From: Antechinus flavipes
Taxonomy: Eukaryota
Length of the DNA stretch: 64,000 bases
Reading direction: 5' to 3'
Assembly (NCBI RefSeq): GCF_016432865.1
Contig: NC_067399.1
Coordinates: 42,842,001-42,906,000, forward strand
Shown here: piece after piece, positions 38,815 through 57,673 of the stretch
Layout of the letters: each line of letters starts with the position of its first letter
How positions within the stretch are numbered: position 1 is the stretch's first letter
The notes under the pieces: model-generated
Database searches by the model: none
Told to the model about the DNA's origin: nothing
What the model saw: only the letters and a program-made list of their open reading frames with translations
Position numbers and translations under genes: made by a program

Positions 38815-39807
38815 ATGCCTGGGGATCACCGGCGCATCCGCGGGCCCGAGGAATCGCAACCGCCTTCGCTGTACGCGCTGCCGGGCCAGGAAGACGACGA
38901 CGATGAGGGGGAGGCCGGAGCGGCTGGGCCCCGCGATCCCGCGCGGCTGCGACCGGTATACGCGCGTGCCGGTCTGCTGAGCCAGGCCAAGGGCTCGGCC
39001 TACCTAGAGGCCGGCCGCACCAAGGTGCTGTGTGCCGTGTCCGGGCCGCGGCCGGCCGAGGGGGAGCGCTCGGGGGCGGCGGCGGCCGGCGCGGGCGGCC
39101 GCCTGGTGTGCGACTTCCGGCGGGCGCCTTTTTCGGGACCGCGGCGGCGGCGGCCGGGAGGTGCGGGCGCGGGCGGCGGCACGGAGGAGCGCGAGCTGGC
39201 GCTGGCAATGCAGGAGGCGCTGGAGCCCGCAGTGCGCCTGGGCCGCTATCCGCGCGCTCAGCTCGAGGTGTCGGCGCTGCTTCTGGAGGACGGCGGCTCG
39301 GCACTGGCCGCCGCGCTCACGGCCGCCTCCCTGGCGCTGGCGGACGCGGGCGTCGAGATGTACGACGTGGTGGTGGGCTGCGCACTGAGCCGCGGCCCGG
39401 GCCCCGACGCCGCCTGGCTGCTGGACCCCACGCGCCGCGAGGAGGAGCGCGCCGCCGCCGGCATCACGGTGGCGCTGCTGCCCGTACTCAACCAGGTGGC
39501 GGGCCTGCTGGGCAGCGGCGAGGCGGGCGAAGCGGAGAGCTGGGCGGCCGCCGTGCGCCTGGGCCTCGAGGGCTGCCAGCGCCTGTACCCCGTGCTGCAG
39601 CAGTGCCTGCTCCGCGCCGCGCGCCGAAGGGGTGAGGCGGCGGCGCCTGGCCCAGGCCCGGCCCCCGCCGCGCCCGGACCTGCCGATGCTGCCGCCGCCG
39701 CCGCGCCCTCCCGGACCCCCTCCGAGGCTGCTGCTGCTGCTGCTGCTGCTTCCGCCGCCGATGCCAACGCCATGACCCTCGACCCAGCTGGGGACTTGGA
39801 GGCCTGA
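38815..39807 (+). CDS. EXOSC6: Exosome complex component MTR3, intronless, 330 aa
   Basis: [17 protein letters not shown]...[24 protein letters not shown]...[20 protein letters not shown]...[13 protein letters not shown]; RNase PH family. Downstream of AARS1 in the same orientation as in human. The ORF-track start at 38506 is an upstream non-ATG start. Confidence 0.97.
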
Positions 39808-40985: not shown

Positions 40986-43010
40986 TTTTTTTCCTTTAAA
41001 CACAATACACTTTTCCAGAGCAGATTTGAAATACACAGTATCATACCAGCAAGAAGACAAGCTAGAAACTGGACATAAGAATGAACTACACCTGTTCTGA
41101 AAGGACAGCATGGGGGAAGGGGGGACAAGGAAGTAACAGGGCTAACCGGGGCAACATCGACCAAGGACCTGACTTATCTTCTACGGAGCAGAAACGCACC
41201 TGTCGGAAACAGAACTCATTTCCCATGCACCACTGTGGGTATGGAATTCTGCAGGGGCTGGGGGAGAAGGGGTCACATGAAGGCTAATAGTGCAAAACAT
41301 TGAAGCCACGGGGTCCTGGGAAAAGGGGGAACCTTGATGAGCCACCGGGAGCTGAGGCGCTGCCCTTGGCCTGGCTTGGTAGGGGTTCTCAGGGACCAGA
41401 GAAAGCACAGAATGGTATCGATCTCATTTTCTCACGCCACAGGGATAAGGGGGTATGCAGCCAATGTCTCCCCGACACTGGCTGGGCAGAAAGAAAGCTG
41501 GGGGAGCCCCATAAGGAACACTGGGGGGTTCTGTGTCAGATGGCTGATTTTGAGAGCAAAACCTGGGTTGTGTCTGCTGTGGAGCCAGGAAGCGAGCCAA
41601 TACTGTTGTAAATGGACTGACTGCTCGAGAGATGGGGGGCTGGGGTGGTACCAGTTCTATCCCTGGGAATGTTTCTTCAAGAAGAAATGTTGAGTGGGTA
41701 CCTGGTGGGGACGGGGAACTGAAAATCATCACTGAGCGATTTTGCAAGAACTTGGAATTGTTGGCCCAGACACTTCCCCAAATGCCCGTCCTGCCAAGCC
41801 TTACTACCAAGGGAACCCCTTTTTCATGAGGTGGGGGAAACAGCACAGAGGAAAGGAGGGTGGAGTTTTTTCAAAGGGAAATTCTAGACCTGCTGGATTT
41901 TCCTGCCTCCCCAGGCCCGTACTCTAGGCCTGCACCTCAGGGACTTGTGCCCAGCTTCTGGAGGAGAGGCTGGAGGGCAGGTCTCACGTGGCACAGGCTG
42001 GGAGGCCGACCCAGGAAGGGCCCCAGTGCTTCTACTGGCTCCCGTCAGGGTCCGATGTGTGGTTTTTCATCTGTACAGGGAAAAAGATGTCTTTAGTCCT
42101 CCCCAGGGCTGCTCAGAGGACCCGAGTCAAAGGCTTGAAGGAGCTATTAGAGGCAACGTGGTGGGGGAGAGGGAGCCAAGTCAGCCGTGGACTCATTTCC
42201 AAGAAGACCCCCGTCTGTGGTGGATCTAAATGGAGTTTTTGAAGAGACCACAGTGGTCTCGTGAGCCTCCCTGAAAGTGTGTCCCACAGTAAAATGGGGA
42301 ACCACGAGAAACTGAACGCAGTGGGAGGTGGGGCTCTGTGTCCGGGTTGTGTCTGAGCCCGAGAACCTCAGCACCCAGGGCTGGGCCAGAGGAGAACACC
42401 TCAGTCCGATTTCTTTCTCCCCCCTCCCCCCAAAAAAAGGAGCTGAGCCAGCTGGGAGGGAAGAGAGATCCCAGCTCCTTCATCTCTCAGCTGAGGATGG
42501 GGGGCTCTCAGAACCCAGAGAACCTCGTACATCAACAAGGTGACGTGAGGATCGACTGGGAGGGACATGGCTCTTCTCCCCGGGAGCGATTCGGGCCGGT
42601 TCCAACACATTTGTGATGGAGGGAGCCGTCCGCACCCAGGGAGGTCTACAGAGCCCAAATGTTCCCCACAACACAGCTTCTCCACCTGCTTGCTCGTTTT
42701 TTCCTTTCCCGTCGTCTATTCCCTTTTTGGTCTGATTTCTTTTGCGCAACAGGGCAACATGGAGATATGTTTACAAGGACTGCGCGTATTTAACCTAGAT
42801 CACAGTGCTTGCTGACTCAAAAACTTGGAATCCAACGTTTCACAAAAAATGAAGGTTGGAACGATGACCAGTTCCAGCTTTTAAGTGGGGGGGTCCAGCG
42901 CTCACTTCTCTCTCCCTCTCCCCTAGGAGGAGCTAACGAGATGCCTCCCCAACCAGCGCAGGGGCAGGAGGGCTGGGGGAAGCGGGGCTGGCGTGGACAC
43001 GGACCCTCAC

Positions 43011-43174
43011 TGCCTCCTCCGTGTCCGTGCTCTCTTCCGCACTGTCGGCCTCCCTGCGGCTGCGAGCTCTGGCCTCCGGGCTCTCTTTGCCCCTGGGCTC
43101 CCGCTGGGCCTCCGGGGCCGCACTGGAGGACTCCCCGCCGGCCGAGGCCGCCTTCTTCTCGCTGTCTTGGGGCC
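43011..43174 (-). CDS. RALY-like gene, acidic C-terminal exon (...EADSAEESTDTEEA)
   Basis: Acceptor CTCTTGTTGCGCAG, probable donor CA|GTGAGG; DSAEE resembles hnRNP C DDSAEEGD; 164 nt. Confidence 0.78.
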
Positions 43175-46100
43175 CTGCGCAACAAGAGCCACCCTGAGAG
43201 GAAGGCTGGGCCTCCCCAGGGTGCCTGGCCCCGCCCCCACCTCTGCCCCCCGGGGCCCATGGGCCCGTCTTCACTGTCCCCAAGGTCACAAACACAGGGG
43301 TCCCCCTGCTCAGTGCGGGGGTACAGAGGGTCGGCCCCCTCCCTGTCCCCAAGGAGCTTATTTCGGTCCGACGGCAGCTCCAGCCGCTCCCACCAAGTCC
43401 ATCTAGGGCGGGCCGGCCCCCTCCACACGGCTCTGGCCAAAGTGAACGGGGCATTTCTGGTGAAAAATGGAACCAGTTCCGCCTGAAGTAGGTTCAGGCG
43501 GTGAAGAAACAGTGGAGAGGGATGGAGAGGGATGGAGCCGGCTGCCACCGGGGCAGCAGCGTCGGAGCGGTGCCAGAAAGCCCAGACGGCACACGGAGCT
43601 TCTTACCTGGCCGGCTCTAGGACCCTGGTCAACTCCCGTCCCCTCTGCCTGCCTCAGTCTGCTCATCTGTAAAATGGGGATAAGGAGGGCCCCTCCTGCC
43701 CCAGGCTGTGCGGGGAGAAGGAGCCGGCACCGGTGACACCCCCTCCCCACCCACCCCCGAGCCCGAAGGCGTTCCATGGTCCTGCCGTGTCTGGAGAGCA
43801 GCCTCCCGGGGACCTGGCCTCCGCACCCCGGGGCAGCCTTACCTCCCAGCCGGTCTCGCCGCTGATCCATGCGCTCCAGACTCTCGAGCAGACTGTCCAC
43901 CTGGGCTTTGATCTGGCTCAGCTCCCCCTTGATCGAGTGCAGCTCCTCAGCTCTTACTGTGCGGGGACAGGGGGTTCAGGGGCCGGCGGGAGGGGAAGGC
44001 CGTCTGGGTCGTGGCTCCCGGCACGCCCCCCCCCCGCCCCATCTCCCCACTCACACTTTGTCCGGACAGGGGGTGGGTTGTTGCTTCGTGGGGGGATGTG
44101 GGGATTGAGGCCACTCTTGCCCCCTGTTCCCATGTGAGTCCGTCTGCTCTTGACAGGCGCTCGGTTGATAAGTGGGGGGATCCTCTGATACTCATAGACC
44201 CTAAAAAACAGCGGGGGCGCCCTGGATGGAGCTCAAGCCTCAGCACAGCCTCGGGGCCGGCCCAGCGGGTGCCCCTCCCAGCAGAGCCCCAGGAAGGGGC
44301 TCTCGAGCCGAGGGGGAAGCACTCACCTGTAGGGGAAGTCTTCCCGATACAGCTCGTAGTTCAGGTCACAGTTACTGCTGCGGAGGAAACGGCAAACACC
44401 AAGGTCACCATCACCCGGGGGCTCCCCGAGCCGGCCCCCAAGTCAGGGACACCCGGGACCACAGGCGGGACAGGGCCCAGCAGCTCTGGCCGGAGCCGCC
44501 CGGCTTCCTCCTGGCCTTCAGGTTCTGGCTGGCCGCGCCACCAGCTCTGGTTCAACTTCTTTCCCGACCCAAAAGGGCGCTTCCCTCCTTTCCTCCTCAC
44601 CCACCTAGGGCAGGATCCCCCTTGTTCCTAGTACTCCCGGCCCCCATCACTGCCAGGTTGTTGTCCTCTTTGGGGGAGCACAGCAGGAGGGCGCAGGCTA
44701 TCGGGCAAGGAAGGAAGCCCAGGGGAAAGGCCTGCGCCTAGGGGCTAGTCGGCAGCAGACACCCCACGATGCGGGGGGTCCCACAGACGCCAAGCAGAAC
44801 CAAGAACAAGAGCTGAGCGAGCGCGGCAGCAAAGGGGCGGAAGCCCCGGGCCGAGGCTCCCCTGAGATAGAAGGAAAGACCGGGGAGCACAGGAGGCACC
44901 GACATCCCAATCTCAGCGGGGGGAGAGCCCCATCGTGCCCCAGGAATGGGCTCTCCTTTACCACCCACGGTCACAGTCTGAGCTACTGACTCCGGGCTGG
45001 CAAAGCTACAGAGCCGGACCCCCGCAGAGCCAGCCCATGGCAACCGTCACATGCTCCGCGGACGAGTGTGGGGAGTACAGAGAAACTGAAAAGATCTTAA
45101 AGAAGCAATGAAAAGTGGAAAAAAGCAGAAAGATAGAGAAAAGGGGAAAAGCAGGGGAAAGCTGGAAGTATCTGGGACTTTAGCTTGCATGGAAGCTGCT
45201 ATCCCGTAAATGTGGCTGTCTGTCTGCCCACAGCCCCATTTCTAGTTCAGGAGGCAGCTGAGGGAGGGGGGAGGGCGGGAAGCAAAGTCCACAAGATTCA
45301 AGTTCAGCCTCAGACAGACTTGTTTCAGCCGGGTGACTATGGGCAGGGCACCTCACCCAGTCTGCCTCAGTTTCCTCATCTGTAAAATGAACTGGACAAG
45401 GAAATGGCAAGCCACTCCAAGAAAACCCCAAATGGGGTTGAGTTGAACATAAATAAGAGTTTAAAAGAGAGATTGTTCACATGTCCTTAACAGCAAAATG
45501 GAGCAAGAAGAGGAGCAAGAGGTCAGGGAGGGAGCAAATTTAAAACTAAGACGATAAGCCAGAGATCAAACTAAGCCCCATCTCCTCCAGGAGGCCTCTC
45601 CAAGGGGCCAGTGCTGGGAGCAAAGGGCAAAGGCTATTTCTAATCAACATGGAAGGGAAAAGAATGTCCCATCCCTCACTCAGACCCCAAACCATCATTC
45701 ACCGGGCTGGGCAGAATAGGGCCATCGAAGGGATTCCCACCAGGGCTAATCACGTCTGGTTCCCAAGGCCGCTACAGTCTGGAGAACAGACAGCAGCTGG
45801 AGCGCAGCAACAAGGGGATGGGGATGCAGCGAGGGAGTCCGTCTGTACCGCTGACCCAGGAGAACAAACCTTGGGGGCTTCCTTTGCTCACCAAGAGACA
45901 AAACACAAAGTGCGCTGCAGCCCCAGCGCCGAGGAGAAACTCGGGCCCCAAGGAGGCTCCCGGCCGCTCAGAGGAGCACGGAAAGCTTCCGGCCCGAGAG
46001 AGCGGAGGCAGCAGCCGGCGGCCCACGGCCCGGCAGGCTCCGCTGAGCTTCCCCCCTTTTATTCTGGCTTATGAGGAGGGACCTCGGCAGGAGAGCCGGC

Positions 46101-49100
46101 CCTGGCCAACACACCAGCCCCAGAACAGGCGGGCCGGGCGGGGACATGATCTGACGGGCCCCCGCTCGGGGGGTCCAGCCTCCGGAACCGATGAAGATGC
46201 TAACCTAGGGAACCGAGGCTGCTTTTTAGAGTGCGACCAAATGGAGCCGTCAGCCAGGGGCAGGGGCTGGACAGCAGGCCCGAGTGGCAGGGGGAGCTCC
46301 GGAAGGCAGCTTTCAGCCAGGCTCAAAGAGCCACGAGGGCCGGGCTTCCTCTGGAAGCCGGGCAGGGCCAGGCCCCCGGCATCATCCCTGCTTTTAAGAA
46401 GCAAGACCAGAAATGACAGAAGCTTAAAAAAAGAGAAAGAAAATAAATAGAAGCAATGGCAGCACCTCCAGCAACAGCCCCTGCCCAGGCCCCTGCCTCA
46501 TGGGGGGATGTCCCAGCACACCAGAGGCTGCTCCCCCTCCCCCCTCCCTGAGTGAGGGCAAGCTGGAAGACTGGGAGATTCCAGGGGAAAAGCAGAAGGA
46601 ACAATGGGGCCTGCTGACTTGGGAAGTCAACCAAGGCGCAGCCCCCAAGACCCGGCCTGAGCGCCCCCTTCTGGTCCCCACTGCAGCGGCAGAGGCCAGC
46701 CCCTGCCCTTCCCCCACTCCCCCCCACATGGCTGCAGACCCACAGGCCGACAGCAGGGGGCCTCAGGCGCACTACTTGGGCAGCTGTGAGCCAGGGCCGG
46801 GGCAGCTGGCGCATTGGTGGTTCAGTGGTAGAATTCTCGCCTGCCACGCGGGAGGCCCGGGTTCGATTCCCGGCCAATGCAGGGCCCTCAAGCCTTTTAG
46901 GGGCTTTTCTCACTCTGCACGGACCACAGAGTCTAAATTTAGTCTCTGGAGTTTAAGATAAAAGCATCATTCCCTTAACTGGGCCCAGGGACTCCCACGG
47001 GCCGGCCCCAAAGCTGAGCAGGGGGATGCCCAAAGTCATCCGGCTCTACTCTGTGGGCAGGGCCCCCTCCTCAGCAAAGCCTGGCCCAGGACCCCCGAGC
47101 CAAGAGCGCGCCTTCCCCCAGGAGCTCACAACCTAACTGGGGAGACGCAAACTCGGCCCAGGGAAGCCCTGCCATTAAGCATGGCTGGGACAGGTTTTAG
47201 CGGGAGCCCGAAGGAAGCCAGGGAAGTGCAGAGGGGAGAGTTCTGTCTGGGAGAGACGCTGCCAGGAGGCAGGCCGCTAGGCGGGAGAAGGCGACAGAGG
47301 CAGGAGGGGCTGCGATGGAGAAAAGGGGCCTCTGGAGCGGGCCGAGGTGCCCTGGGCAGACCCGCACTTCAGGAAAACCCTTGGGCTGGAAGGAGGAGCA
47401 GCCGCTGGGGCGGGCCAGGGCAGTGTCTGGAGAGGAGAGCTTGGATACAGGAGGGGCTGAGAGTCTCCGGGACTCGGCAGTAACAGGGGAGGCGGGGGCA
47501 GGGAGGGGTTGAGTCTCCCTTGTCTACTGGACTTTGAGTTTGAGACACCCGCAAGGCAGGCAGAGATGCCGGATCGGGTCAGCAGAGAGATTGCAGAAGG
47601 ACAAGGAGGTCTGAGAATCTTCCACCAAGAGACGGGAGTTAAATTTGGACATCAGTCAGCAGCTGCGCTCTACCCAAGCAACAGCTCTGAACCTGACCCG
47701 GGAGAGTTCCAATTCACCAGGGGGGATCAGCACTTCTCTGACGTGAACTAGAGACCTGATCTGACGTGGATGAATGTGAATCACAGTCTTCATGATTCTG
47801 AACCTACCACATCTACTATAGGGCTGCTGATTTCCCACAAAAAAAGAGAGAAAAAGGAGAAATGTGGATATACGGATATCTCTTGGCCAAGTCCATCTTT
47901 CCCTGACCCTTCAATCATCTCATTTCCCCCCCTTTAATCCTACATTGGTAAAGACTGTAAGTTCCATAAAGAGAGAATCATAACTTACCTAAAATTTGAA
48001 TCTCTCCCAATGTTACAATGCCCAAACACAGCAGGTACGTAAAAAATGGTGGATAAATCAAAGAGAAAATGCCAAGTGGTCTTCACCAATTCGAGGTGGA
48101 AGGCCTTGCGGAGATCTCTCCCATTGTCAGGTTCCCCACCCTCTATTCCTTCTTCCTGCTTTTCTGATCCCACCCCACAGGGAGATCAGTGGAGGCTCCG
48201 AGCTTTAAGGAGAGCACCTTGAAGGATGATGTGGAGAATAACCCAAATAAACAGGACAGGAGAAATGATGGGGAGAGGTGAGCTGGGGCTATGGAGAATG
48301 GCAGACAGCAGCACTTAACAGCTTTTTGGGTGTCACCAAGATGGGACCAATGAAACAATAGGTCCAGAGCTACCTGGCTGGAGCTGGCCCCATTACTGAT
48401 GGAGGAAAAGGGAGCTGCCAGCAACAGCATTCATGAGACAGAAAGCAGACCTCTCCCTCTTCAGGCCAGAGCACTCCTGGACCATCCCCATGGCAACAAG
48501 CTAAGTAATTAGGCCCCTGAGCAGCTCCCTGGGCTGGTTCTCCCTCCTTTTGCTTCCCTCCCCCTTCCGGCTCCCCCCCATCCCTTTTCTCAGCAGGAGG
48601 ATGCTCAGCCATGCCCCATCCCAAGCAAGACTCACCCAGCAGAGACCCGTGAATGCTATAGGTGGTCAGTGGGGGGTGACAAGCCTATGCCCACCTTCCT
48701 AGGGCAGGCTAGGGCCAGAGGTCATCTCCAGGCCACAGCCTTCACAAGCCATCAGTCCCCAACTTTGGCCTGGTTCTGGCTAGCAGACTCCTCTGGGTCC
48801 CCGAGAAGCCAGGGTGATAGGGAAGGATTGACAGAAAGCCCAGCTTTGTGCTGCATCACCCCGGGGGGATTCCGTGCTGGCTCAAGAGGATGGAGTGGAG
48901 CCTCTGCGTCCCTAGCTGGTCTGAGGCATGGGTCCAGACCCAGTGGAATGAGTGGCCCCCCAGCCTCCCCCAGCCCCACTCTCCTTGGGCCCTTTGGCCA
49001 GCTTGTCCCCAAAGCTCTGAAAGAGACTCACTGGTAGAGGGTAGCGCTGTGCTGTCGCTTCTGGCCAGGCCGGGCCCGGCTCCCTTTGGGGTCTCTGGCC

Positions 49101-52100
49101 ATGTCTAAATCTAGAGAAAAGGAGGGAGAAAGAGCAGTTAGAAGCACGAGAAAGCAGGCTAGCTAGTGGGTAGGCAAGGCTATTAAGGAGAGGGAAAGAA
49201 GTCCAGCAAAGAAACCTTAACTTTAAAAATGCCTAAAGATGCCAGAGGTGGAGACTTCAGCCCAAAGCGGCCTTGCACCCTCAGTCCTCCTTGGGGACCT
49301 GGACCAGGGCCACCCCAACCCAAAAAGACTTAGGTTCTGGGATATGAGACCTACATTTGCTTCCACAAGACCTTGCAGGAAAAGCTGAGTTCAGAAAAGA
49401 TTCTTCAGGAGCAACAAAAGGTGTTTCCTCCCCAATCTAAAGTAAGGGGCCTACAGCTCTCCTCTCCCAGGCTCTGGAACCAAAGGACAGGTGAGAAGTA
49501 TCATCTAAACCTTCTGTGCTCTGGGGGAGAAAAAGGCTCAGGAGCTCCTGGGACCCCATCCCTCTCCAAGCAGGCTTCTGGGGCAAATAGAAGAGGCCTG
49601 GAAATCTGCCACCCCCCAAAGGGGCAGAACAGGCCACAACTTGCCAGTGGTTCGCTGTATCCTGTTAGCAAGCGTAAGGTTCAATCAAGTGCTGAAACCC
49701 CCTGGAGAGTCTCACCAAGTGCATACTGACCCAGACACTAAAGCTTGGGGTTCTGGGGGAGGAGCCAGAGAGAAATTAGAGGGGGATTTAGAACATCTGT
49801 TTTTAAACTCTCTTCCTGGTCTTTAGTGAAATAAATTCAACAAACTGACAATTCAAGTAGAAGTCCCCAATTAATCTGGATTTGTTTTAAAGATCCACAA
49901 GTTCAAAGCTGTAAAGGATGTTAAAAGATTATCTAATCCAACTCCACTTTAAGACCACAAATGGAGACAAGATGCAGCAACTTGTCCAATGTCACACAAT
50001 TTAGTGACAAGAGCTGTGACATGTTTGCAATTAATTTTATTTTATTTTTAGCGCAGAATTCTCTTCCTCCCACCTCCACCTTATCCATTGAGAAAATACA
50101 AACAAAATGTACAGAAATGGATAGTCCAGAAAAAACCACATGTCCAGGTTGGCCCCTACCTCCCGGCCATCACCTCAGTCAAGAAGTGACAGCAGGCAGC
50201 ACCGGGCACCCTGTGAGGACTCCCCAAGTCTTTACAATGTTGCTCAACCTCTCTCTTAGTCGTTCTCCTGGGCCGGCTTTGCATCAGTTCATACAAGACT
50301 TCCTTGGGTTTCTCAAGAAACGTCCCCTTCTTCATTTCTTATGGTGCAACACACTCCATCACAGTCAAACACCCCAGTTGATGGGCATCCCCTTGATCCC
50401 AACTCTGCTGCCCCAGAGCTGCTCCATGTGGGGCTTTTCTTCCGCCTCTGGTCAGAGCTGTGACTGAAGCCAGATCTGACTCCAGTTCTTGCTACTAGAC
50501 ACCTTACTTTATACTTAAAATCACTTTAAAGGAACTGCCATACCAAGAATTATCTTTAAAAGATTATTGGCATGCTGTAAATTGGTTATAAGGAACAGGA
50601 AAAAACGCTGCCCTGGGTATCCATCAGCCAACAAGCACCTGCTAAACACTTACCATGTCCCAGGCAATCCTAAACATGGGCTACAACAAATAATGTTCTC
50701 ACCCTCAAGGAGCTCACGTTCTAAGGACACGATCTATACAGCATGATAGGATGGTGATCTTTGAAGGAGGAGGGAGCCTGAGCCAAGGTCTGAAGGAAAC
50801 CAGACAAGTCAGGAGTGGTGAGAAGAAGCCAGAGCAAAGCCCCAGAGCCCAGCCTAGCACCGACCAAGGCAAGGAGGCTGGAGGCAAGGGCTGCCCAAGA
50901 AGTCTGGGGAGGTCCCTGTGAAGGCCGTGGCTGTGGGAGTAAAAAAGGTGGAAATGGGGAAGGTTTGGAGGGAACCTAAGGTGTGCAGGCCCCCAAGCTT
51001 CAATGAAGAATGGAACAAACGGCTTGGAGCAGGAGGCTCTACCTGAGCAAGTCGCTAAGAACAACAGATGTGAAGCTTTCTCCAACAAAGCACAAAGCAC
51101 TCTGCTTCCCCCACCATACATCAAGTGCAAGGCACAGAACAAGCAACATCAGCAAGAAAACTTGCCAGCAGCCTTGTCCAGAGGGAAGCCATACAATTTC
51201 CAGACATCAACCAAAGACTCCATTCAGTAAACATGGACATGAGTCTTTCTAATTTCCTTTTTCATAGTCACAACAGTCCTGCAAGAGGAGAAAATTCTTC
51301 AGAGTGCCAGTTAGTCGAGACCTCCCCTCCCTCCGAGAAGATGGGACTTAGGAGACCAAAGCAGGCAGCACGCCTAAGGATGGGAGCAGCCTCCCCACCA
51401 TTCACTGGGCCCAAACATCATCCTGCATCCCAACACGGGGCGGGTGGATGTCACTCAGAGTCCTTTGGCCAGCAATGTCATATGGGAACCAAGAATTTCC
51501 CAGTCTCCGATCACCATCAGCCTGCTTCAGTCTCCTGACCATCCCACCGCCACACTCATTTAGATGCTCATTCTCACAGAACTTATTACAAGAGTCTCTT
51601 AACTGGTCTCTAACTCTTTACTCTCCACTTTCCAATCCAACCTCCCTTCAATACGTGAAGCAGAGTGGGGCACATGGTTCCTCTGCACGAGAGCCCAGGT
51701 GCAAAGCCAGGTCCTGACTCCAAGGCACACCCTTCTTTGGGGCAAATATAAAAGTGGATTCCAAAGGAAAAAGAAAACCAGCAGGTGGAACTCCAAGCAA
51801 GCTGAATTGTTCTACATCTCCTTTTACTGGGTTTTCTGAGGACTCTAAGTGCAGGCGTTCCAGGGCAGCAGGGCCCCACAAGCGCTAGGCAAAAACCCCA
51901 GATGTGGGGAGAATACCTACCTCCAGAGATAGAAGGAACAGTGTGTTCCTGAGCGAGCGAGCAGGGCCACAGAGAAAGTCCCCAGAGAACCGACACTGTG
52001 CAGCCTCGTTATGGGGACCCACGCCTCTGCTGCCCCACACCTCTGCTGCCCTCCTTTCAAATGCAGGATTCCCGCAACTTGTCTTTACATCTTCCTAGAA

Positions 52101-55100
52101 TTCCAACTCTGTCCCAGATCCTACCTGTCTACAGACATGTAGGTGCGTCTTTTTCTAATTTATTTTTTCCTAAGTCACAACAGCTCTTGAACCTACCCCT
52201 AGAGAGAGATTAAGCTGTCTAAGGAATCCTCTATTGACCGTCTACATCTGACTTAATGATTTGGTGCTGCTTTGACCAACGAATGAACCAATGGGGAAAG
52301 GAGTGAGAACCAGCAGGGCTGCTGGATGATTAAATTTTTAACTACTGCAACTTAAGACCTGTAGCTCAGATGGAGAGGGGTTGCTGCCTTTGCTAGTCAA
52401 GGCATCTGCAAGCAAGCCTTTTAATGGTGACTCTCCTCTCCAAATATCTGAGCAGCCAACATGGAGAGGGGAGGACAAAGTTATGTTTGGGCCAGGTGCC
52501 AAAAGTGGCTACCTAAAATGCAAGTATCAAGAGGTGAGTTGAGGCTTATAGCAGAGAAAACAGGACTATTTAAAAGTGAATGTGCTGCCTTGAGAATAGG
52601 CTTCAGAAATCTTTAAGGCTGAATGAGGATCGCTTCGATAACTTATTTTAAAAAATTTTTCCTGTCTTTTTGTTTTCAGACCCATCATCTCCAAACACAT
52701 TTCCCCAGTATCAACCACACAGGGACCCCTTCTAACCAGGGATGCCATTAAAACATAAGGGGCTCTCTACTTTTCTGCCAAAAAGAGGAATATTTCATCC
52801 TTTGTTCCCTGGTACCATAAAATCACCGAGTTTAGCTTTTTCTTTCCATAATTAGGGTCACTGTTCTCCTGGTTGCTCTTGTGTAAGCACACTGGTGGGG
52901 CCTCAGGACCTATAGAGCTTATGGGACAGCTACCCTTAAGCTCTAGAATCCAAATCAACAGCCACTCTTCTAGGGGACCCTAATCTCCAAGCATGAAAAT
53001 CACATGAGATGCAGAGGGAGTGAGCCTAGAGGAGACAAGAGCCCAGAAAGACTGTTAGGGTAGTCAACACCCATGCTCTGATAATTTGGTATTTGTCTTA
53101 AGAGTCAGTTTTTGAAGGAGGGAAACAGCCAGATCTGTGATTTCACTGGTAAAAAACTGTTAAACTCCCAATGCAGATCAGCAACTGCTCTGTAGTTTCA
53201 GAGAATTAGTTTCCTCCTCTTGTGGCACAATAATCCATTCCATAATCAACAAAACTTGGTTTAATTTTTCTCCAATTCATGTGGACTCACTTTTGTTTCA
53301 AGTTTTTTACTACCATAAAAAAGTGTTTTTAATATGCACATATATATTGGGGCTTTCTGTGACTGCCTTGATGTGTGACCCCAAAGTGAGATTTGTGGGA
53401 TTAAAGATCAAGTTTAGAGCCTTTTCTCCTAGAATTTCAAACCATCTTCAAGAACAATGAGTCAATTCACAGCTTCATCAACATTTGTGTTTGATTCCCA
53501 CAGCCCCTCCAATACTTTTCATCTTTGACACTTTGTTGGGTATGAGACTAAAGCCCCACAATTCTCCTAATGTATATTCTTTTAGCGTAATCTAGACTGA
53601 TTTCTCACGTGACTGATTACTTACGGCTCTTGAAAACTGCATTTATATCTTATGACTTTGTGTATTTGTTTCAAATAACAGCTGGAACAGCCACAGATTC
53701 TAATTTAGAGAAGCCTTTTCTCTCATATTTTGGAGCTGTCTGACTTCTGCATGTGTCCCTGGTAGTCTCAGGGCTAGTCCAACCATAAAACTCAGTGTGT
53801 TCCTAACCTCCCTTCCTAGCCCGGCCTTGAAGGAATTTCAGAGCACTATTCCCAGTCATTCCATCATCTTCAAAGTTCACTGGTTAAATCCAGCCTCAAA
53901 AACTGTACTTCTCAATAGACCTACCTCAATGATGGAGATGGGGAAGGAAGGCAAAAGGTAGTGGGACCAAGTTGAGCTTTAGTTCCCTTCTCAAGAGGTA
54001 AACATGTCAATTCACATTAGCAAGTGCCTCCCACTTGGCCAAATACTTCCACACCCATGGTCTTCTACATGATCTTGACCACCCCGTGAAGCCAGCAGCA
54101 CCCTTTCGCTACGCCATCTCCTTTTGTTAGATTTCTATCCTATCTAGGGCTTCTCTGTCCTTATGTTTGCTTGTCGTCTTCCACATTAGATTGTGATCTC
54201 CTTGAGGGCAGTCTCCTGCCTTTCTTTGTACAGGGCAGCCAGGTTGATGGGAGAGAGCTTTGCCAATCTTAGAACACTATGTAAGTGGTGATATGCCAGC
54301 ATCCTGCCCGCTCTGTGCCAGGCTATGCCTCCCTGCTCCCAGCCAGCCCCAAGACCCAGAGGCAGAGGTGCTCCAAGCCCAGCAGGCCTTCCTTAACCCC
54401 CCTGCCCCGACCCTTGACACTTCAAGGAGGGACAGTCTAGACCCGAGAAGAAGGGATGGGAGGCCCAGGGCAGGTGCACAGAGAGAACTGCGCTGACTGC
54501 CTGGGGTCTGGCTGCCTCAGGGACTGATCTGCCCTTCACTTCTTGCCCATCCTTCTGCTGGCTCTGTTGCCTGACCCTGATGTGAGCAAGCAAGCAGAAG
54601 AGCCTCAATTAACTCAAGCGAGCTCTCCCTTAGCTATGCACTGTGGAGTGGACAGTGTTCTTAACTGGAGTAAGGAAGACTTGGATTCAAATCCTAGCTC
54701 AGAGATCCTGATCATGTCCCCGAACTCCTCAGCCTCGGTTTCCTCACCTGTAACTGAGGGCTGGGAGGAAGGATAAGACCCCTTCCAGCTCTGTTTGTGA
54801 GCGCAGGCCCTGGGACACGGTGGGATGAATGTGCAGACCTTCGCATCTCAAAGACCATCCACCAAGCTGGAGAGGGGCTGGTCACCCCCGAGGAGGCCAC
54901 ACAGGTGACAGACCAAACAATGCTCCCCACTCACCGCCTTCCTCCCGTCAGCCTCACACTTAGGTCTGAACGTCGGGTAGAGATCTGATTTCCACATCTG
55001 TCCAGCTCCTCACAAATATCAAGGGGACATGTTTCAGATGCCTCTGAACTTCCCCGGGCAGGGGGCACACAGGACAATCCCGGCCACACTTCAGAGGCTG

Positions 55101-57673: not shown

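What the first reader, a model, noticed from the sequence alone, without database searches (positions are those of the whole stretch)
49111..57636. The RALY-like gene appears to lack the RRM: possible modulatory or dominant-negative subunit of hnRNP C tetramers
Seen: no ORF with RNP motifs (SRVFIGNL, KYG, KGxAFVQY) in the ORF track or in my manual read of either flank. The CpG-island exon (phase 1) joins the linker exon (phase 1) directly and in frame. Known: hnRNP C family proteins bind U-tracts through an N-terminal RRM and oligomerise through the leucine-zipper-like coiled coil, which is well preserved here (LHSIKGELSQIKAQVDSLLESL). Inference: an RRM-less paralogue could co-assemble with hnRNP C/RALY and lower RRM valency or change specificity, like Id proteins for bHLH factors, giving a regulatory layer for splicing and SINE-exon suppression.
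Basis: partly seen in the sequence, partly recalled or inferred. Interest (0 to 1): 0.8.

Follow-up and report, generated by a model that had tools for sequence, protein, structure and literature searches.

The report
RRM-less fourth hnRNP C paralogue
This marsupial gene is a real, strongly conserved fourth member of the hnRNP C/RALY/RALYL family that lacks the RNA-recognition motif in every vertebrate examined but keeps the basic region, the tetramerising zipper and an acidic tail, so it is in effect a natural "delta-RRM hnRNP C" that I found no paper on.

Summary
Positions 49111-57636 are exactly intron 1 of a minus-strand gene identical to Antechinus flavipes XP_051829489.1. Exon 1b (MTLFGSEEACRR plus 1 nt) joins exon A (49110-49032) in phase 1.

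- **No RRM at this locus.** None is encoded in the 64-kb window or in the 10 kb upstream of the annotated start. A CLEC18-like gene ends about 64.5 kb in window terms, so little room is left for a hidden exon.
- **No RRM in the orthologues.** Teleost, lungfish, coelacanth, sauropsid, monotreme, marsupial and many eutherian proteins (mouse Gm38523) are all RRM-less. Squamate RNA contigs show the exon 1 to exon A join, one with an in-frame stop upstream.
- **A working gene.** dN/dS among marsupials is 0.07-0.12.
- **A fourth clade.** The family forms its own gnathostome clade (97/89), sister to HNRNPC (83/75).
- **An old first exon.** Its 13-codon first exon resembles the alternative first exon of RRM-less RALYL isoforms, which suggests an old internal promoter.

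The zipper core matches hnRNP C, so mixed tetramers are plausible but untested. Unlike Id proteins, this protein keeps the basic region, which in hnRNP C gives sequence-independent RNA binding.

I found no paper on it. No anthropoid primate protein appeared among the named hits. Two other first-reader notes of this scan cover the same stretch.

The parts
58671..58865 (-). Alternative non-coding 5' exon (1c); ends are approximate
   Evidence: A spliced didelphid cDNA-like contig (L001) aligns here and then continues into exon A. It has an in-frame stop upstream, so this isoform starts at the Met of exon A.
58304..58379 (-). Alternative first coding exon 1a (MHGSRHKC...HART plus 1 nt, GTGAGT donor)
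   Evidence: tblastn with Sminthopsis isoform X8; sequence read.
57637..57673 (-). Conserved first coding exon 1b: MTLFGSEEACRR plus 1 nt, GTGAGT donor, inside a CpG island
   Evidence: The same 13-residue start is seen in birds, turtles, crocodile, squamates, platypus and teleosts.
57674..58039 (-). Open reading frame upstream of the conserved Met (MSPGPK...), included in the 333-aa NCBI model; probably 5' UTR or promoter DNA rather than coding
   Evidence: Over the 74 codons of this stretch that a koala-like RNA contig covers (about 57674-57894), dN/dS is 0.69 and changes are spread 5/7/7 over the codon positions. dS is 0.12 there against 0.36 in the core.
49111..57636 (-). Intron 1 (8,526 nt): no RRM-coding potential on either strand
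   Evidence: no notable repeats; no Rfam match.
49032..49110 (-). Exon A: (Y)LDMARDPKGSRARPGQKRQHSATLY(H), homologous to the D|INMAGEPK...LY exon that follows the RRM exon in RALY, RALYL and HNRNPC
44327..44377 (-). Exon B: acidic-aromatic AUX motif (SNCDLNYELYREDFPYR); NAGNAG alternative acceptor at 44374
   Evidence: isoforms with and without the Ser.
44055..44200 (-). Exon C: VYEYQRIPPLINRAPVKSRR... = BASIC region (8 K/R, 2 His and no acidic residue in the 40 residues before the zipper)
43843..43956 (-). Exon D: leucine-zipper-like coiled coil (LRAEELHSIKGELSQIKAQVDSLLESLERMDQRRDRLG)
   Evidence: Matches PDB 1TXP, the hnRNP C tetramerisation domain, at E=1.6e-5. AF2 predicts a helix at residues 107-141 with block-mean pLDDT 94-98 over residues 111-140. 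Heptad comparison.
43011..43174 (-). Exon E: acidic, Ser-rich tail with the conserved DSAEESTDTEE; alternative donor 6 nt downstream
42032..42070 (-). Exon F coding part: MKNHTSDPDGSQ plus stop; the 3' UTR runs on to about 41020

Best explanation
This is a working protein-coding gene: the fourth gnathostome paralogue of HNRNPC, RALY and RALYL. It sits between a CLEC18-like gene and EXOSC6/AARS. It encodes only the post-RRM part of the family architecture: the AUX acidic-aromatic motif, a BASIC region, the leucine-zipper-like coiled coil and a short acidic tail.

Transcription starts in a CpG island. A 13-codon first exon (MTLFG...RY) splices in phase 1 to the exon that follows the RRM exon in the other paralogues. 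That first exon resembles the alternative first exon of RRM-less RALYL isoforms. The likely history is therefore that an ancestral internal promoter already made an RRM-less isoform, and this paralogue kept only that form.

Inferred mechanism: the zipper drives tetramer formation, which presents four BASIC regions. The protein would then bind long RNA in a sequence-independent way, like delta-RRM hnRNP C, without U-tract specificity. It could do this on its own or mixed with hnRNP C-family subunits.

Shown: the gene structure, the absence of the RRM, the conservation, and the retained BASIC and ZIPPER features. Inferred: oligomerisation, RNA binding and any interplay with hnRNP C.
For: - Canonical splice sites and a product identical to XP_051829489.1.
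- No RRM in the window or in the 10 kb upstream of the annotated start. Neighbouring genes bound the locus.
- More than 100 RRM-less orthologues, from teleosts, lungfish and coelacanth to mammals. Pfam RRM_1 is absent in them and present in the paralogue controls.
- Squamate RNA contigs join exon 1 directly to exon A. One (L004) has an in-frame stop three codons before the ATG. Marsupial spliced contigs have no RRM exon either.
- dN/dS is 0.07-0.12.
- The family forms its own clade, 97/89, sister to HNRNPC.
- The first exon is shared with RALYL isoform X2. X2 and the RRM-bearing X1 diverge exactly at the D/Y codon before INMAGEP.
- The zipper matches 1TXP. Its a/d residues are the same as in hnRNP C except one conservative d-position change (I to M), and it is 21/28 identical to the non-mammalian HNRNPC consensus.
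- The BASIC region is kept.
- AF2 predicts one confident helix and disorder elsewhere.
- Delta-RRM hnRNP C binds RNA like wild type, and BASIC plus ZIPPER carry that binding (PMC9943658).
Against: - There are no RNA reads from Antechinus itself.
- Oligomerisation and RNA binding are inferred from sequence only.
- The acidic tail is much shorter and less acidic than in hnRNP C.
- Eutherian copies evolve faster. Muroid copies have lost exon B and most of the tail. No anthropoid protein appeared among the named hits. The function therefore seems dispensable in some lineages.
- The first-exon homology rests on 13 residues.
- The deeper tree nodes have only moderate support (83/75 and 93/85).
Confidence: 0.62

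Rival explanations
1. One reading: the protein acts mainly as a modulatory or dominant-negative subunit. It enters hnRNP C, RALY or RALYL tetramers through the shared zipper. This lowers the number of RRMs per particle and weakens U-tract-dependent functions such as repression of SINE exons.
For: The a/d core residues and the e positions of the zipper are the same as in hnRNP C except one conservative d-position change (I to M), and no repulsive charge is introduced at g positions. The zipper matches 1TXP. The clade is sister to HNRNPC. RRM-less RALYL isoforms from the same ancestral exon suggest that RRM-plus and RRM-less subunits have long been made side by side.
Against: - No test of hetero-oligomerisation was possible.
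- The solvent-exposed b/c/f residues of the zipper are clade-specific and nearly invariant across amniotes (H, G, S, A-Q). This fits a private partner or self-assembly at least as well.
- The BASIC region is kept, so the protein is not an Id-like blank subunit.
- Expression level and tissue overlap with hnRNP C are unknown.
Confidence: 0.3
2. The protein has left RNA biology. The coiled coil and the conserved PPLI/PVK and DSAEESTDTEE motifs would serve a protein-scaffold or chromatin role unrelated to hnRNP particles.
For: The invariant IPPL motif and the C-terminal KNHTSDPEGSQ have no known RNA role. The acidic tail differs from hnRNP C's. There is no Pfam or structural match outside the zipper.
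Against: The BASIC region composition is maintained across about 430 My, as expected if nucleic-acid binding is retained. The AUX-BASIC-ZIPPER order is colinear with hnRNP C.
Confidence: 0.1
3. An RRM exon exists but was missed, either outside the window or too diverged to detect.
For: In RALYL the RRM exon lies upstream of the alternative first exon, so an upstream exon was worth looking for.
Against: - Nothing was found in 49111-64000 or in the further 4 kb upstream.
- The next gene on the same strand (CAP plus Lectin_C domains) ends about 5.6 kb upstream of the first exons.
- None of the orthologue models or RNA contigs has an RRM.
- One squamate mRNA has an in-frame stop just before the ATG.
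Confidence: 0.02
4. It is a decaying pseudogene or a non-coding transcript whose ORF is preserved by chance.
For: The gene evolves fast in eutherians, is truncated in muroids, and has no anthropoid protein among the named hits.
Against: dN/dS is 0.07-0.12 among three marsupials at dS 0.36-0.50. All splice sites are intact. The zipper is invariant across amniotes.
Confidence: 0.02

Closest known systems
hnRNP C1/C2 (HNRNPC)
   Same: Same order of AUX acidic-aromatic motif, BASIC region, leucine-zipper-like coiled coil and acidic tail. The zipper is 21/28 identical to the non-mammalian HNRNPC consensus, and all a/d positions are the same except one conservative d-position change (I to M). The intron position and phase before the INM/LDM exon are the same. 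It is the sister clade in the tree.
   Different: There is no RRM exon at all. The protein is shorter (209 aa). The tail is much shorter and less acidic. A 13-residue N-terminus comes from its own CpG-island promoter.
RRM-less isoforms of RALYL (for example Oncorhynchus masou isoform X2, and Paramormyrops and Mastacembelus RALYL models starting MTMYKGKRRNQRY)
   Same: The first coding exon is 13-14 codons long, of the pattern M-T-[LM]-[FY]-K......R-Y. It is spliced in phase 1 to the same downstream exon and gives a BASIC plus ZIPPER protein without an RRM.
   Different: In RALYL this is one of two promoters of a gene that also makes the RRM form. Here it is the only form, and the gene belongs to a different clade at a different locus.
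Engineered delta-RRM hnRNP C (Dantsuji et al. 2023, PMC9943658)
   Same: The domain content is the same: BASIC, ZIPPER and ACIDIC without the RRM. The mutant binds RNA about as strongly as wild type and still blocks PHAX on long RNA.
   Different: That is a laboratory deletion of human hnRNP C. This is a natural gene with its own sequence, and its binding has not been measured.
Id proteins (dominant-negative HLH)
   Same: Both keep the oligomerisation module of a nucleic-acid-binding family while lacking a binding module.
   Different: Id proteins lack the basic region that contacts nucleic acid. This protein keeps its BASIC region and lacks only the specificity module.

Membership tests
hnRNP C family (HNRNPC/RALY/RALYL) | N-terminal RRM (Pfam PF00076) with RNP2 and RNP1 | tested here: not met
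   There is no RRM_1 hit at E up to 1 in the product or in orthologues, while controls score 1e-10 to 1e-11. No coding potential was found in the window or in the 10 kb upstream of the annotated start.
hnRNP C family (HNRNPC/RALY/RALYL) | Post-RRM exon (D)INMAGEPK...LY with the intron in phase 1 before it | tested here: met
   Exon A 49110-49032 aligns to it. The phase was read, and the same boundary appears in the RALYL X1/X2 isoform pair.
hnRNP C family (HNRNPC/RALY/RALYL) | AUX acidic-aromatic motif (DLDYD-Y-RDD-Y-R) | tested here: met
   Exon B encodes NCDLNYELYREDFPYR, nearly invariant in the clade.
hnRNP C family (HNRNPC/RALY/RALYL) | BASIC region of about 40 residues, rich in K/R and free of acidic residues, next to the zipper | tested here: met
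   The count is 8 K/R, 2 His and 0 D/E here, and 7-10 K/R with 0-1 D/E across amniote orthologues. HNRNPC has 9-11 K/R and 0 D/E.
hnRNP C family (HNRNPC/RALY/RALYL) | Leucine-zipper-like coiled coil homologous to the hnRNP C tetramerisation domain (PDB 1TXP) | tested here: met
   A profile hit to 1txp_A at E=1.6e-5, an a/d core matching hnRNP C apart from one conservative I-to-M change, and an AF2 helix at 107-141 with block-mean pLDDT 94-98 over residues 111-140.
hnRNP C family (HNRNPC/RALY/RALYL) | Acidic C-terminal domain | tested here: inconclusive
   The tail is about 75 residues with 17-21 D/E but also 10-14 K/R. hnRNP C has 40-49 D/E in 105-119 residues. A conserved DSAEESTDTEE block is present.
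hnRNP C family (HNRNPC/RALY/RALYL) | Placement inside the family tree | tested here: met
   Using the post-RRM region (191 columns), the family forms a separate fourth gnathostome clade (97/89). It is sister to HNRNPC (83/75), with lamprey as root.
hnRNP C family (HNRNPC/RALY/RALYL) | Formation of stable tetramers and binding of long RNA | not testable with these tools
   This needs biochemistry or a multimer prediction. Only a single-chain model could be made.
Id-like dominant-negative subunit | Keeps the oligomerisation domain but lacks every nucleic-acid-binding region | tested here: not met
   The RRM is absent but the BASIC region is retained. In hnRNP C the BASIC region is the main sequence-independent RNA-binding determinant (PMC9943658).

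The most novel reading that the evidence does not exclude
Before the vertebrate genome duplications, the ancestral hnRNP C/RALY gene may already have had an internal promoter making a BASIC plus ZIPPER isoform without an RRM. One of the four ohnologues then became a dedicated RRM-less subunit (subfunctionalisation). It has been kept for more than 400 My because it sets the RRM valency and U-tract dependence of hnRNP C-family tetramers. Anthropoid primates lost it, which would mean human hnRNP particles lack a regulatory subunit that most vertebrates have.
Probability: 0.25. Interest if true: 0.78.

Novelty: new variant of a known kind. Interest (0 to 1): 0.58.

Why it matters
[quoted passage not shown] It measures transcript length and keeps SINE and Alu exons out of mRNAs. 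Its family is described as having three members, all with an RRM.

A fourth member exists, conserved from fish to marsupials, that has only the BASIC-ZIPPER-ACIDIC part. It is a natural experiment on what the RRM contributes. It is also a candidate partner or competitor of hnRNP C particles.

Databases label it only with automatic names such as "RNA-binding Raly-like protein" or "hnRNP C-like". This hides it behind true RALYL. The mouse orthologue Gm38523 had no paper in the searched library, and no anthropoid primate protein appeared among the named hits, which may explain why it has been overlooked. It can be tested directly in mouse, chicken or zebrafish.

Tried and rejected
- **RNA reads.** No Antechinus RNA evidence was therefore obtained. 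Those places were sent to no search tool afterwards; later scans started at 45400.
- **RNA runs.** The look-up of sequencing runs listed likely RNA runs holding 72-74% of the words of 42700-44400, but they could not be examined.
- **Pfam on single exons.** This gave only chance coiled-coil hits (BLOC1_2, E about 0.06-0.09).
- **AGRP as a neighbour.** I tested whether AGRP sits next to the gene, by analogy with ASIP next to RALY. No agouti cysteine pattern is present in the window, and the paper that prompted the idea mentions RALYL only in a synteny list.
- **Literature.** Searches for a described RRM-less paralogue, for RALYL alternative promoters, for a family phylogeny and for Gm38523 found nothing relevant.
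- **The 333-aa NCBI model.** I considered that its N-terminal extension, which contains RGG-like motifs, might replace the RRM. I rejected this as unsupported: dN/dS is 0.69 and changes are even over the codon positions.
- **Exon A alignment.** I first read exon A as having a two-residue deletion relative to LDINMA. The correct alignment is Y-L-D-M-A to D-I-N-M-A without a gap.
- **Earlier findings.** A word search returned nothing.
Full report
**What is there**

The finding's interval 49111-57636 is exactly the first intron of a minus-strand gene. I rebuilt the gene from the sequence and from tblastn with orthologous proteins.

| Part | Coordinates | Content |
|---|---|---|
| Exon 1b (coding) | 57673-57637 | MTLFGSEEACRR plus 1 nt, GTGAGT donor |
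| Exon A | 49110-49032 | Begins with 2 nt of a codon |
| Exon B | 44377-44327 | AUX acidic-aromatic motif |
| Exon C | 44200-44055 | BASIC region |
| Exon D | 43956-43843 | Zipper |
| Exon E | 43174-43011 | Acidic tail |
| Exon F | 42070-42032 | C-terminus and stop |

Every acceptor is AG and every donor is GT. The 209-aa product equals the C-terminal part of XP_051829489.1, "heterogeneous nuclear ribonucleoprotein C-like" of Antechinus flavipes, apart from a 6-nt alternative donor. The window is therefore from that dasyurid marsupial.

Two further first exons lie in the same CpG island. Exon 1a is coding (58379-58304). Exon 1c is non-coding (about 58865-58671) and is seen in a spliced didelphid contig.

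**Is the RRM really absent?**

- A six-frame motif scan of 49111-64000 gave three isolated chance hits and no RNP2/RNP1 pair.
- A permissive tblastn used the first 130 residues of 13 RRM-bearing family members (RALY, RALYL, HNRNPC, lamprey, hagfish). It hit only exon A in the whole 64 kb, through the post-RRM segment.
- The Antechinus locus with 10-kb flanks shows a gene with CAP and Lectin_C domains (CLEC18-like) upstream on the same strand. It ends at window-equivalent position about 64,480. Downstream lie a single-exon RNase_PH gene (EXOSC6-like, 38815-39807 on the plus strand) and an alanyl-tRNA synthetase.
- The 10 kb upstream of the annotated start hold no RRM homology either. The "exon beyond the window" loophole is therefore nearly closed.
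- Pfam finds no RRM_1 in the product or in orthologues at E up to 1. RALYL, HNRNPC and RALY controls score 1e-10 to 1e-11.
- AlphaFold2 with a 40-sequence alignment gives one confident element, a helix at residues 107-141 (block-mean pLDDT 94-98 over residues 111-140). The rest is predicted disordered.

**Relatives**

A word-indexed search with the zipper exon and an exhaustive profile search found RRM-less orthologues in these groups:

- marsupials and platypus;
- birds, turtles, crocodile and squamates;
- many eutherians: cats, dog, pig, whales, horse, rhinoceros, bats, elephants, dugong, tenrec, armadillo, rodents (including mouse Gm38523), hare, colugo and lemurs;
- lungfish, coelacanth and teleosts (hake, smelt, arapaima, shad, a catostomid and others).

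Non-eutherian proteins start with the same 13 residues, MTLF[GK]S....R[YH].

Two squamate-like RNA contigs join that exon directly to LDMAREPK. One (L004) has an in-frame stop three codons before the ATG. Two marsupial spliced contigs go from CpG-island exons to exon A or exon B, with no RRM exon.

Among primates, only strepsirrhines appear in the named hits. This suggests loss or non-annotation in anthropoids, but I did not test it on DNA.

**Is it a working gene?**

Pairwise dN/dS between Antechinus and two other marsupial coding sequences is 0.07-0.12, at dS 0.36-0.50. Twenty-seven columns are invariant in a 34-species amniote alignment, most of them in the zipper.

The N-terminal extension of the 333-aa NCBI model behaves differently. 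Over the 74 codons compared, dN/dS is 0.69, changes are even over the codon positions, and dS is low. I read it as conserved promoter or UTR DNA rather than coding sequence.

**Place in the family**

A maximum-likelihood tree of the post-RRM region (44 sequences, 191 columns, lamprey as root) gives four gnathostome clades:

| Clade | Support |
|---|---|
| RALYL | 99/91 |
| RALY | 100/99 |
| HNRNPC | 100/99 |
| This family, with its fish members | 97/89 |

This family is sister to HNRNPC with moderate support (83/75). Both cyclostome sequences carry an RRM.

The position between CLEC18, EXOSC6 and AARS corresponds, from my memory of the human map, to 16q22.1.

**An old internal promoter**

RALYL also makes RRM-less proteins that begin MTMYKGKRRNQRY (several teleosts) or MTMCRSKRRHQRY (a bat). 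In Oncorhynchus masou, isoforms X1 (with RRM) and X2 (MAMYNKGRRRNQRY) of one gene diverge exactly at the D/Y codon before INMAGEP.

The shared features are:
- exon length (13 codons plus 1 nt; 14 codons in the salmonid form);
- phase;
- the downstream partner exon;
- six identical residues.

Together these argue that the first exon here and the RALYL alternative exon are homologous. If so, an RRM-less isoform predates the split of these paralogues, and this gene kept only that form. This step is an inference from a short motif.

**How it probably works**

The 40 residues before the zipper hold 8 K/R, 2 His and no acidic residue. Across amniote orthologues the range is 7-10 K/R and 0-1 D/E, against 9-11 K/R and 0 D/E in HNRNPC.

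The zipper profile matches PDB 1TXP, the hnRNP C tetramerisation domain, at E=1.6e-5. The a/d residues are L-I-L-I-V-L-L-M against L-I-L-I-V-L-L-I in hnRNP C. The e positions are identical, and the g positions differ conservatively. Overall, 21 of 28 residues equal the non-mammalian HNRNPC consensus.

For human hnRNP C, Dantsuji et al. (PMC9943658) report three relevant results:
- the BASIC region gives strong sequence-independent RNA binding;
- the ZIPPER gives tetramers;
- a delta-RRM mutant binds RNA about as well as wild type, while the RRM adds U-tract recognition.

The simplest reading is that this gene encodes a natural delta-RRM subunit. It would form tetramers and bind long RNA without U-tract preference.

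Whether it forms its own tetramers or mixes with hnRNP C, RALY or RALYL cannot be decided here. The interface residues allow mixing. The clade-specific, invariant surface residues of the helix fit a private assembly or partner equally well.

The Id analogy fails on one point: the nucleic-acid-binding basic region is kept.

**Limits**

There is therefore no direct RNA evidence from Antechinus. Those places were sent to no search tool afterwards.
- Names and taxa come from automatic database annotation.
- I could not check amphibians or cartilaginous fishes.
- The deep nodes of the tree have only moderate support.

**Novelty**

The gene models exist in NCBI under misleading automatic names. I found no paper that describes a fourth, RRM-less family member, and none that mentions Gm38523. 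I rate it a new variant of a known kind, of moderate to good interest.

Noticed in passing
window:46811-46881 (+): A tRNA-Gly(GCC) gene or tRNA-derived element lies inside the exon A to exon B intron, on the opposite strand. Rfam scores it 66.6 bits, and ARAGORN agrees.
   Followed up: partly
window:38815-39807 (+); L003: A single-exon RNase_PH gene (EXOSC6-like, Pfam E=1e-30) sits in the GC-rich block just downstream. An alanyl-tRNA synthetase follows it, and a CAP plus Lectin_C (CLEC18-like) gene lies just upstream of the window end. From memory, this order corresponds to human 16q22.1.
   Followed up: partly
window:57674-58039 (-): The 333-aa NCBI model starts at an upstream ATG (MSPGPK...). 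Similar starts are predicted in opossum, platypus and elephant. However, over the 74 codons compared (about 57674-57894) dN/dS is 0.69 with low dS. The stretch looks like conserved CpG-island or UTR DNA, so the model may be over-extended.
   Followed up: partly
window:44374-44377 and 43005-43011 (-): A NAGNAG acceptor at exon B adds or drops one Ser. An alternative donor 6 nt downstream of exon E adds or drops Val-Arg. Both forms appear among marsupial isoform models.
   Followed up: partly
L001 (GCA_029782595.1 contig JARCCX010223086.1, 1679 nt): A fully spliced copy of the gene sits on a short contig of a marsupial genome assembly. Its protein is identical to the corresponding part of the Monodelphis model. 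It is either a processed retrocopy or cDNA contamination. It also carries a short internal duplication of the exon E/F junction.
   Followed up: no
L002 (Logan SRR31061196 contig): A koala-like RNA contig joins exon 1b directly to exon B and skips exon A. This shifts the frame of the MTLFG start, and the gene caller used another start. It is an exon-A-skipping isoform of unknown abundance.
   Followed up: no
orthologues (P0292, P0128, P0289, P0290; P0073-P0092): Eutherian copies are more diverged from the marsupial protein (52-58% identity) than bird or turtle copies are (67-74%). They have lost the MTLFG start codon. Muroid copies, including mouse Gm38523, lack exon B and most of the acidic tail. 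No haplorhine primate protein appeared among the named hits.
   Followed up: partly
P0321 (Phalacrocorax carbo isoform X3): A cormorant model fuses a Lectin_C domain to this protein. It is presumably a read-through from the upstream CLEC18-like gene, and it shows that the neighbourhood is conserved in birds.
   Followed up: no
They lie in the exon A to exon B intron, were not studied further, and were sent to no search tool.
   Followed up: no
runs X1-X18: Eighteen runs of a second organism each hold exactly 0.20 of the sampled words of 42700-44400. This was not explained; it could be a conserved part or a threshold effect.
   Followed up: no
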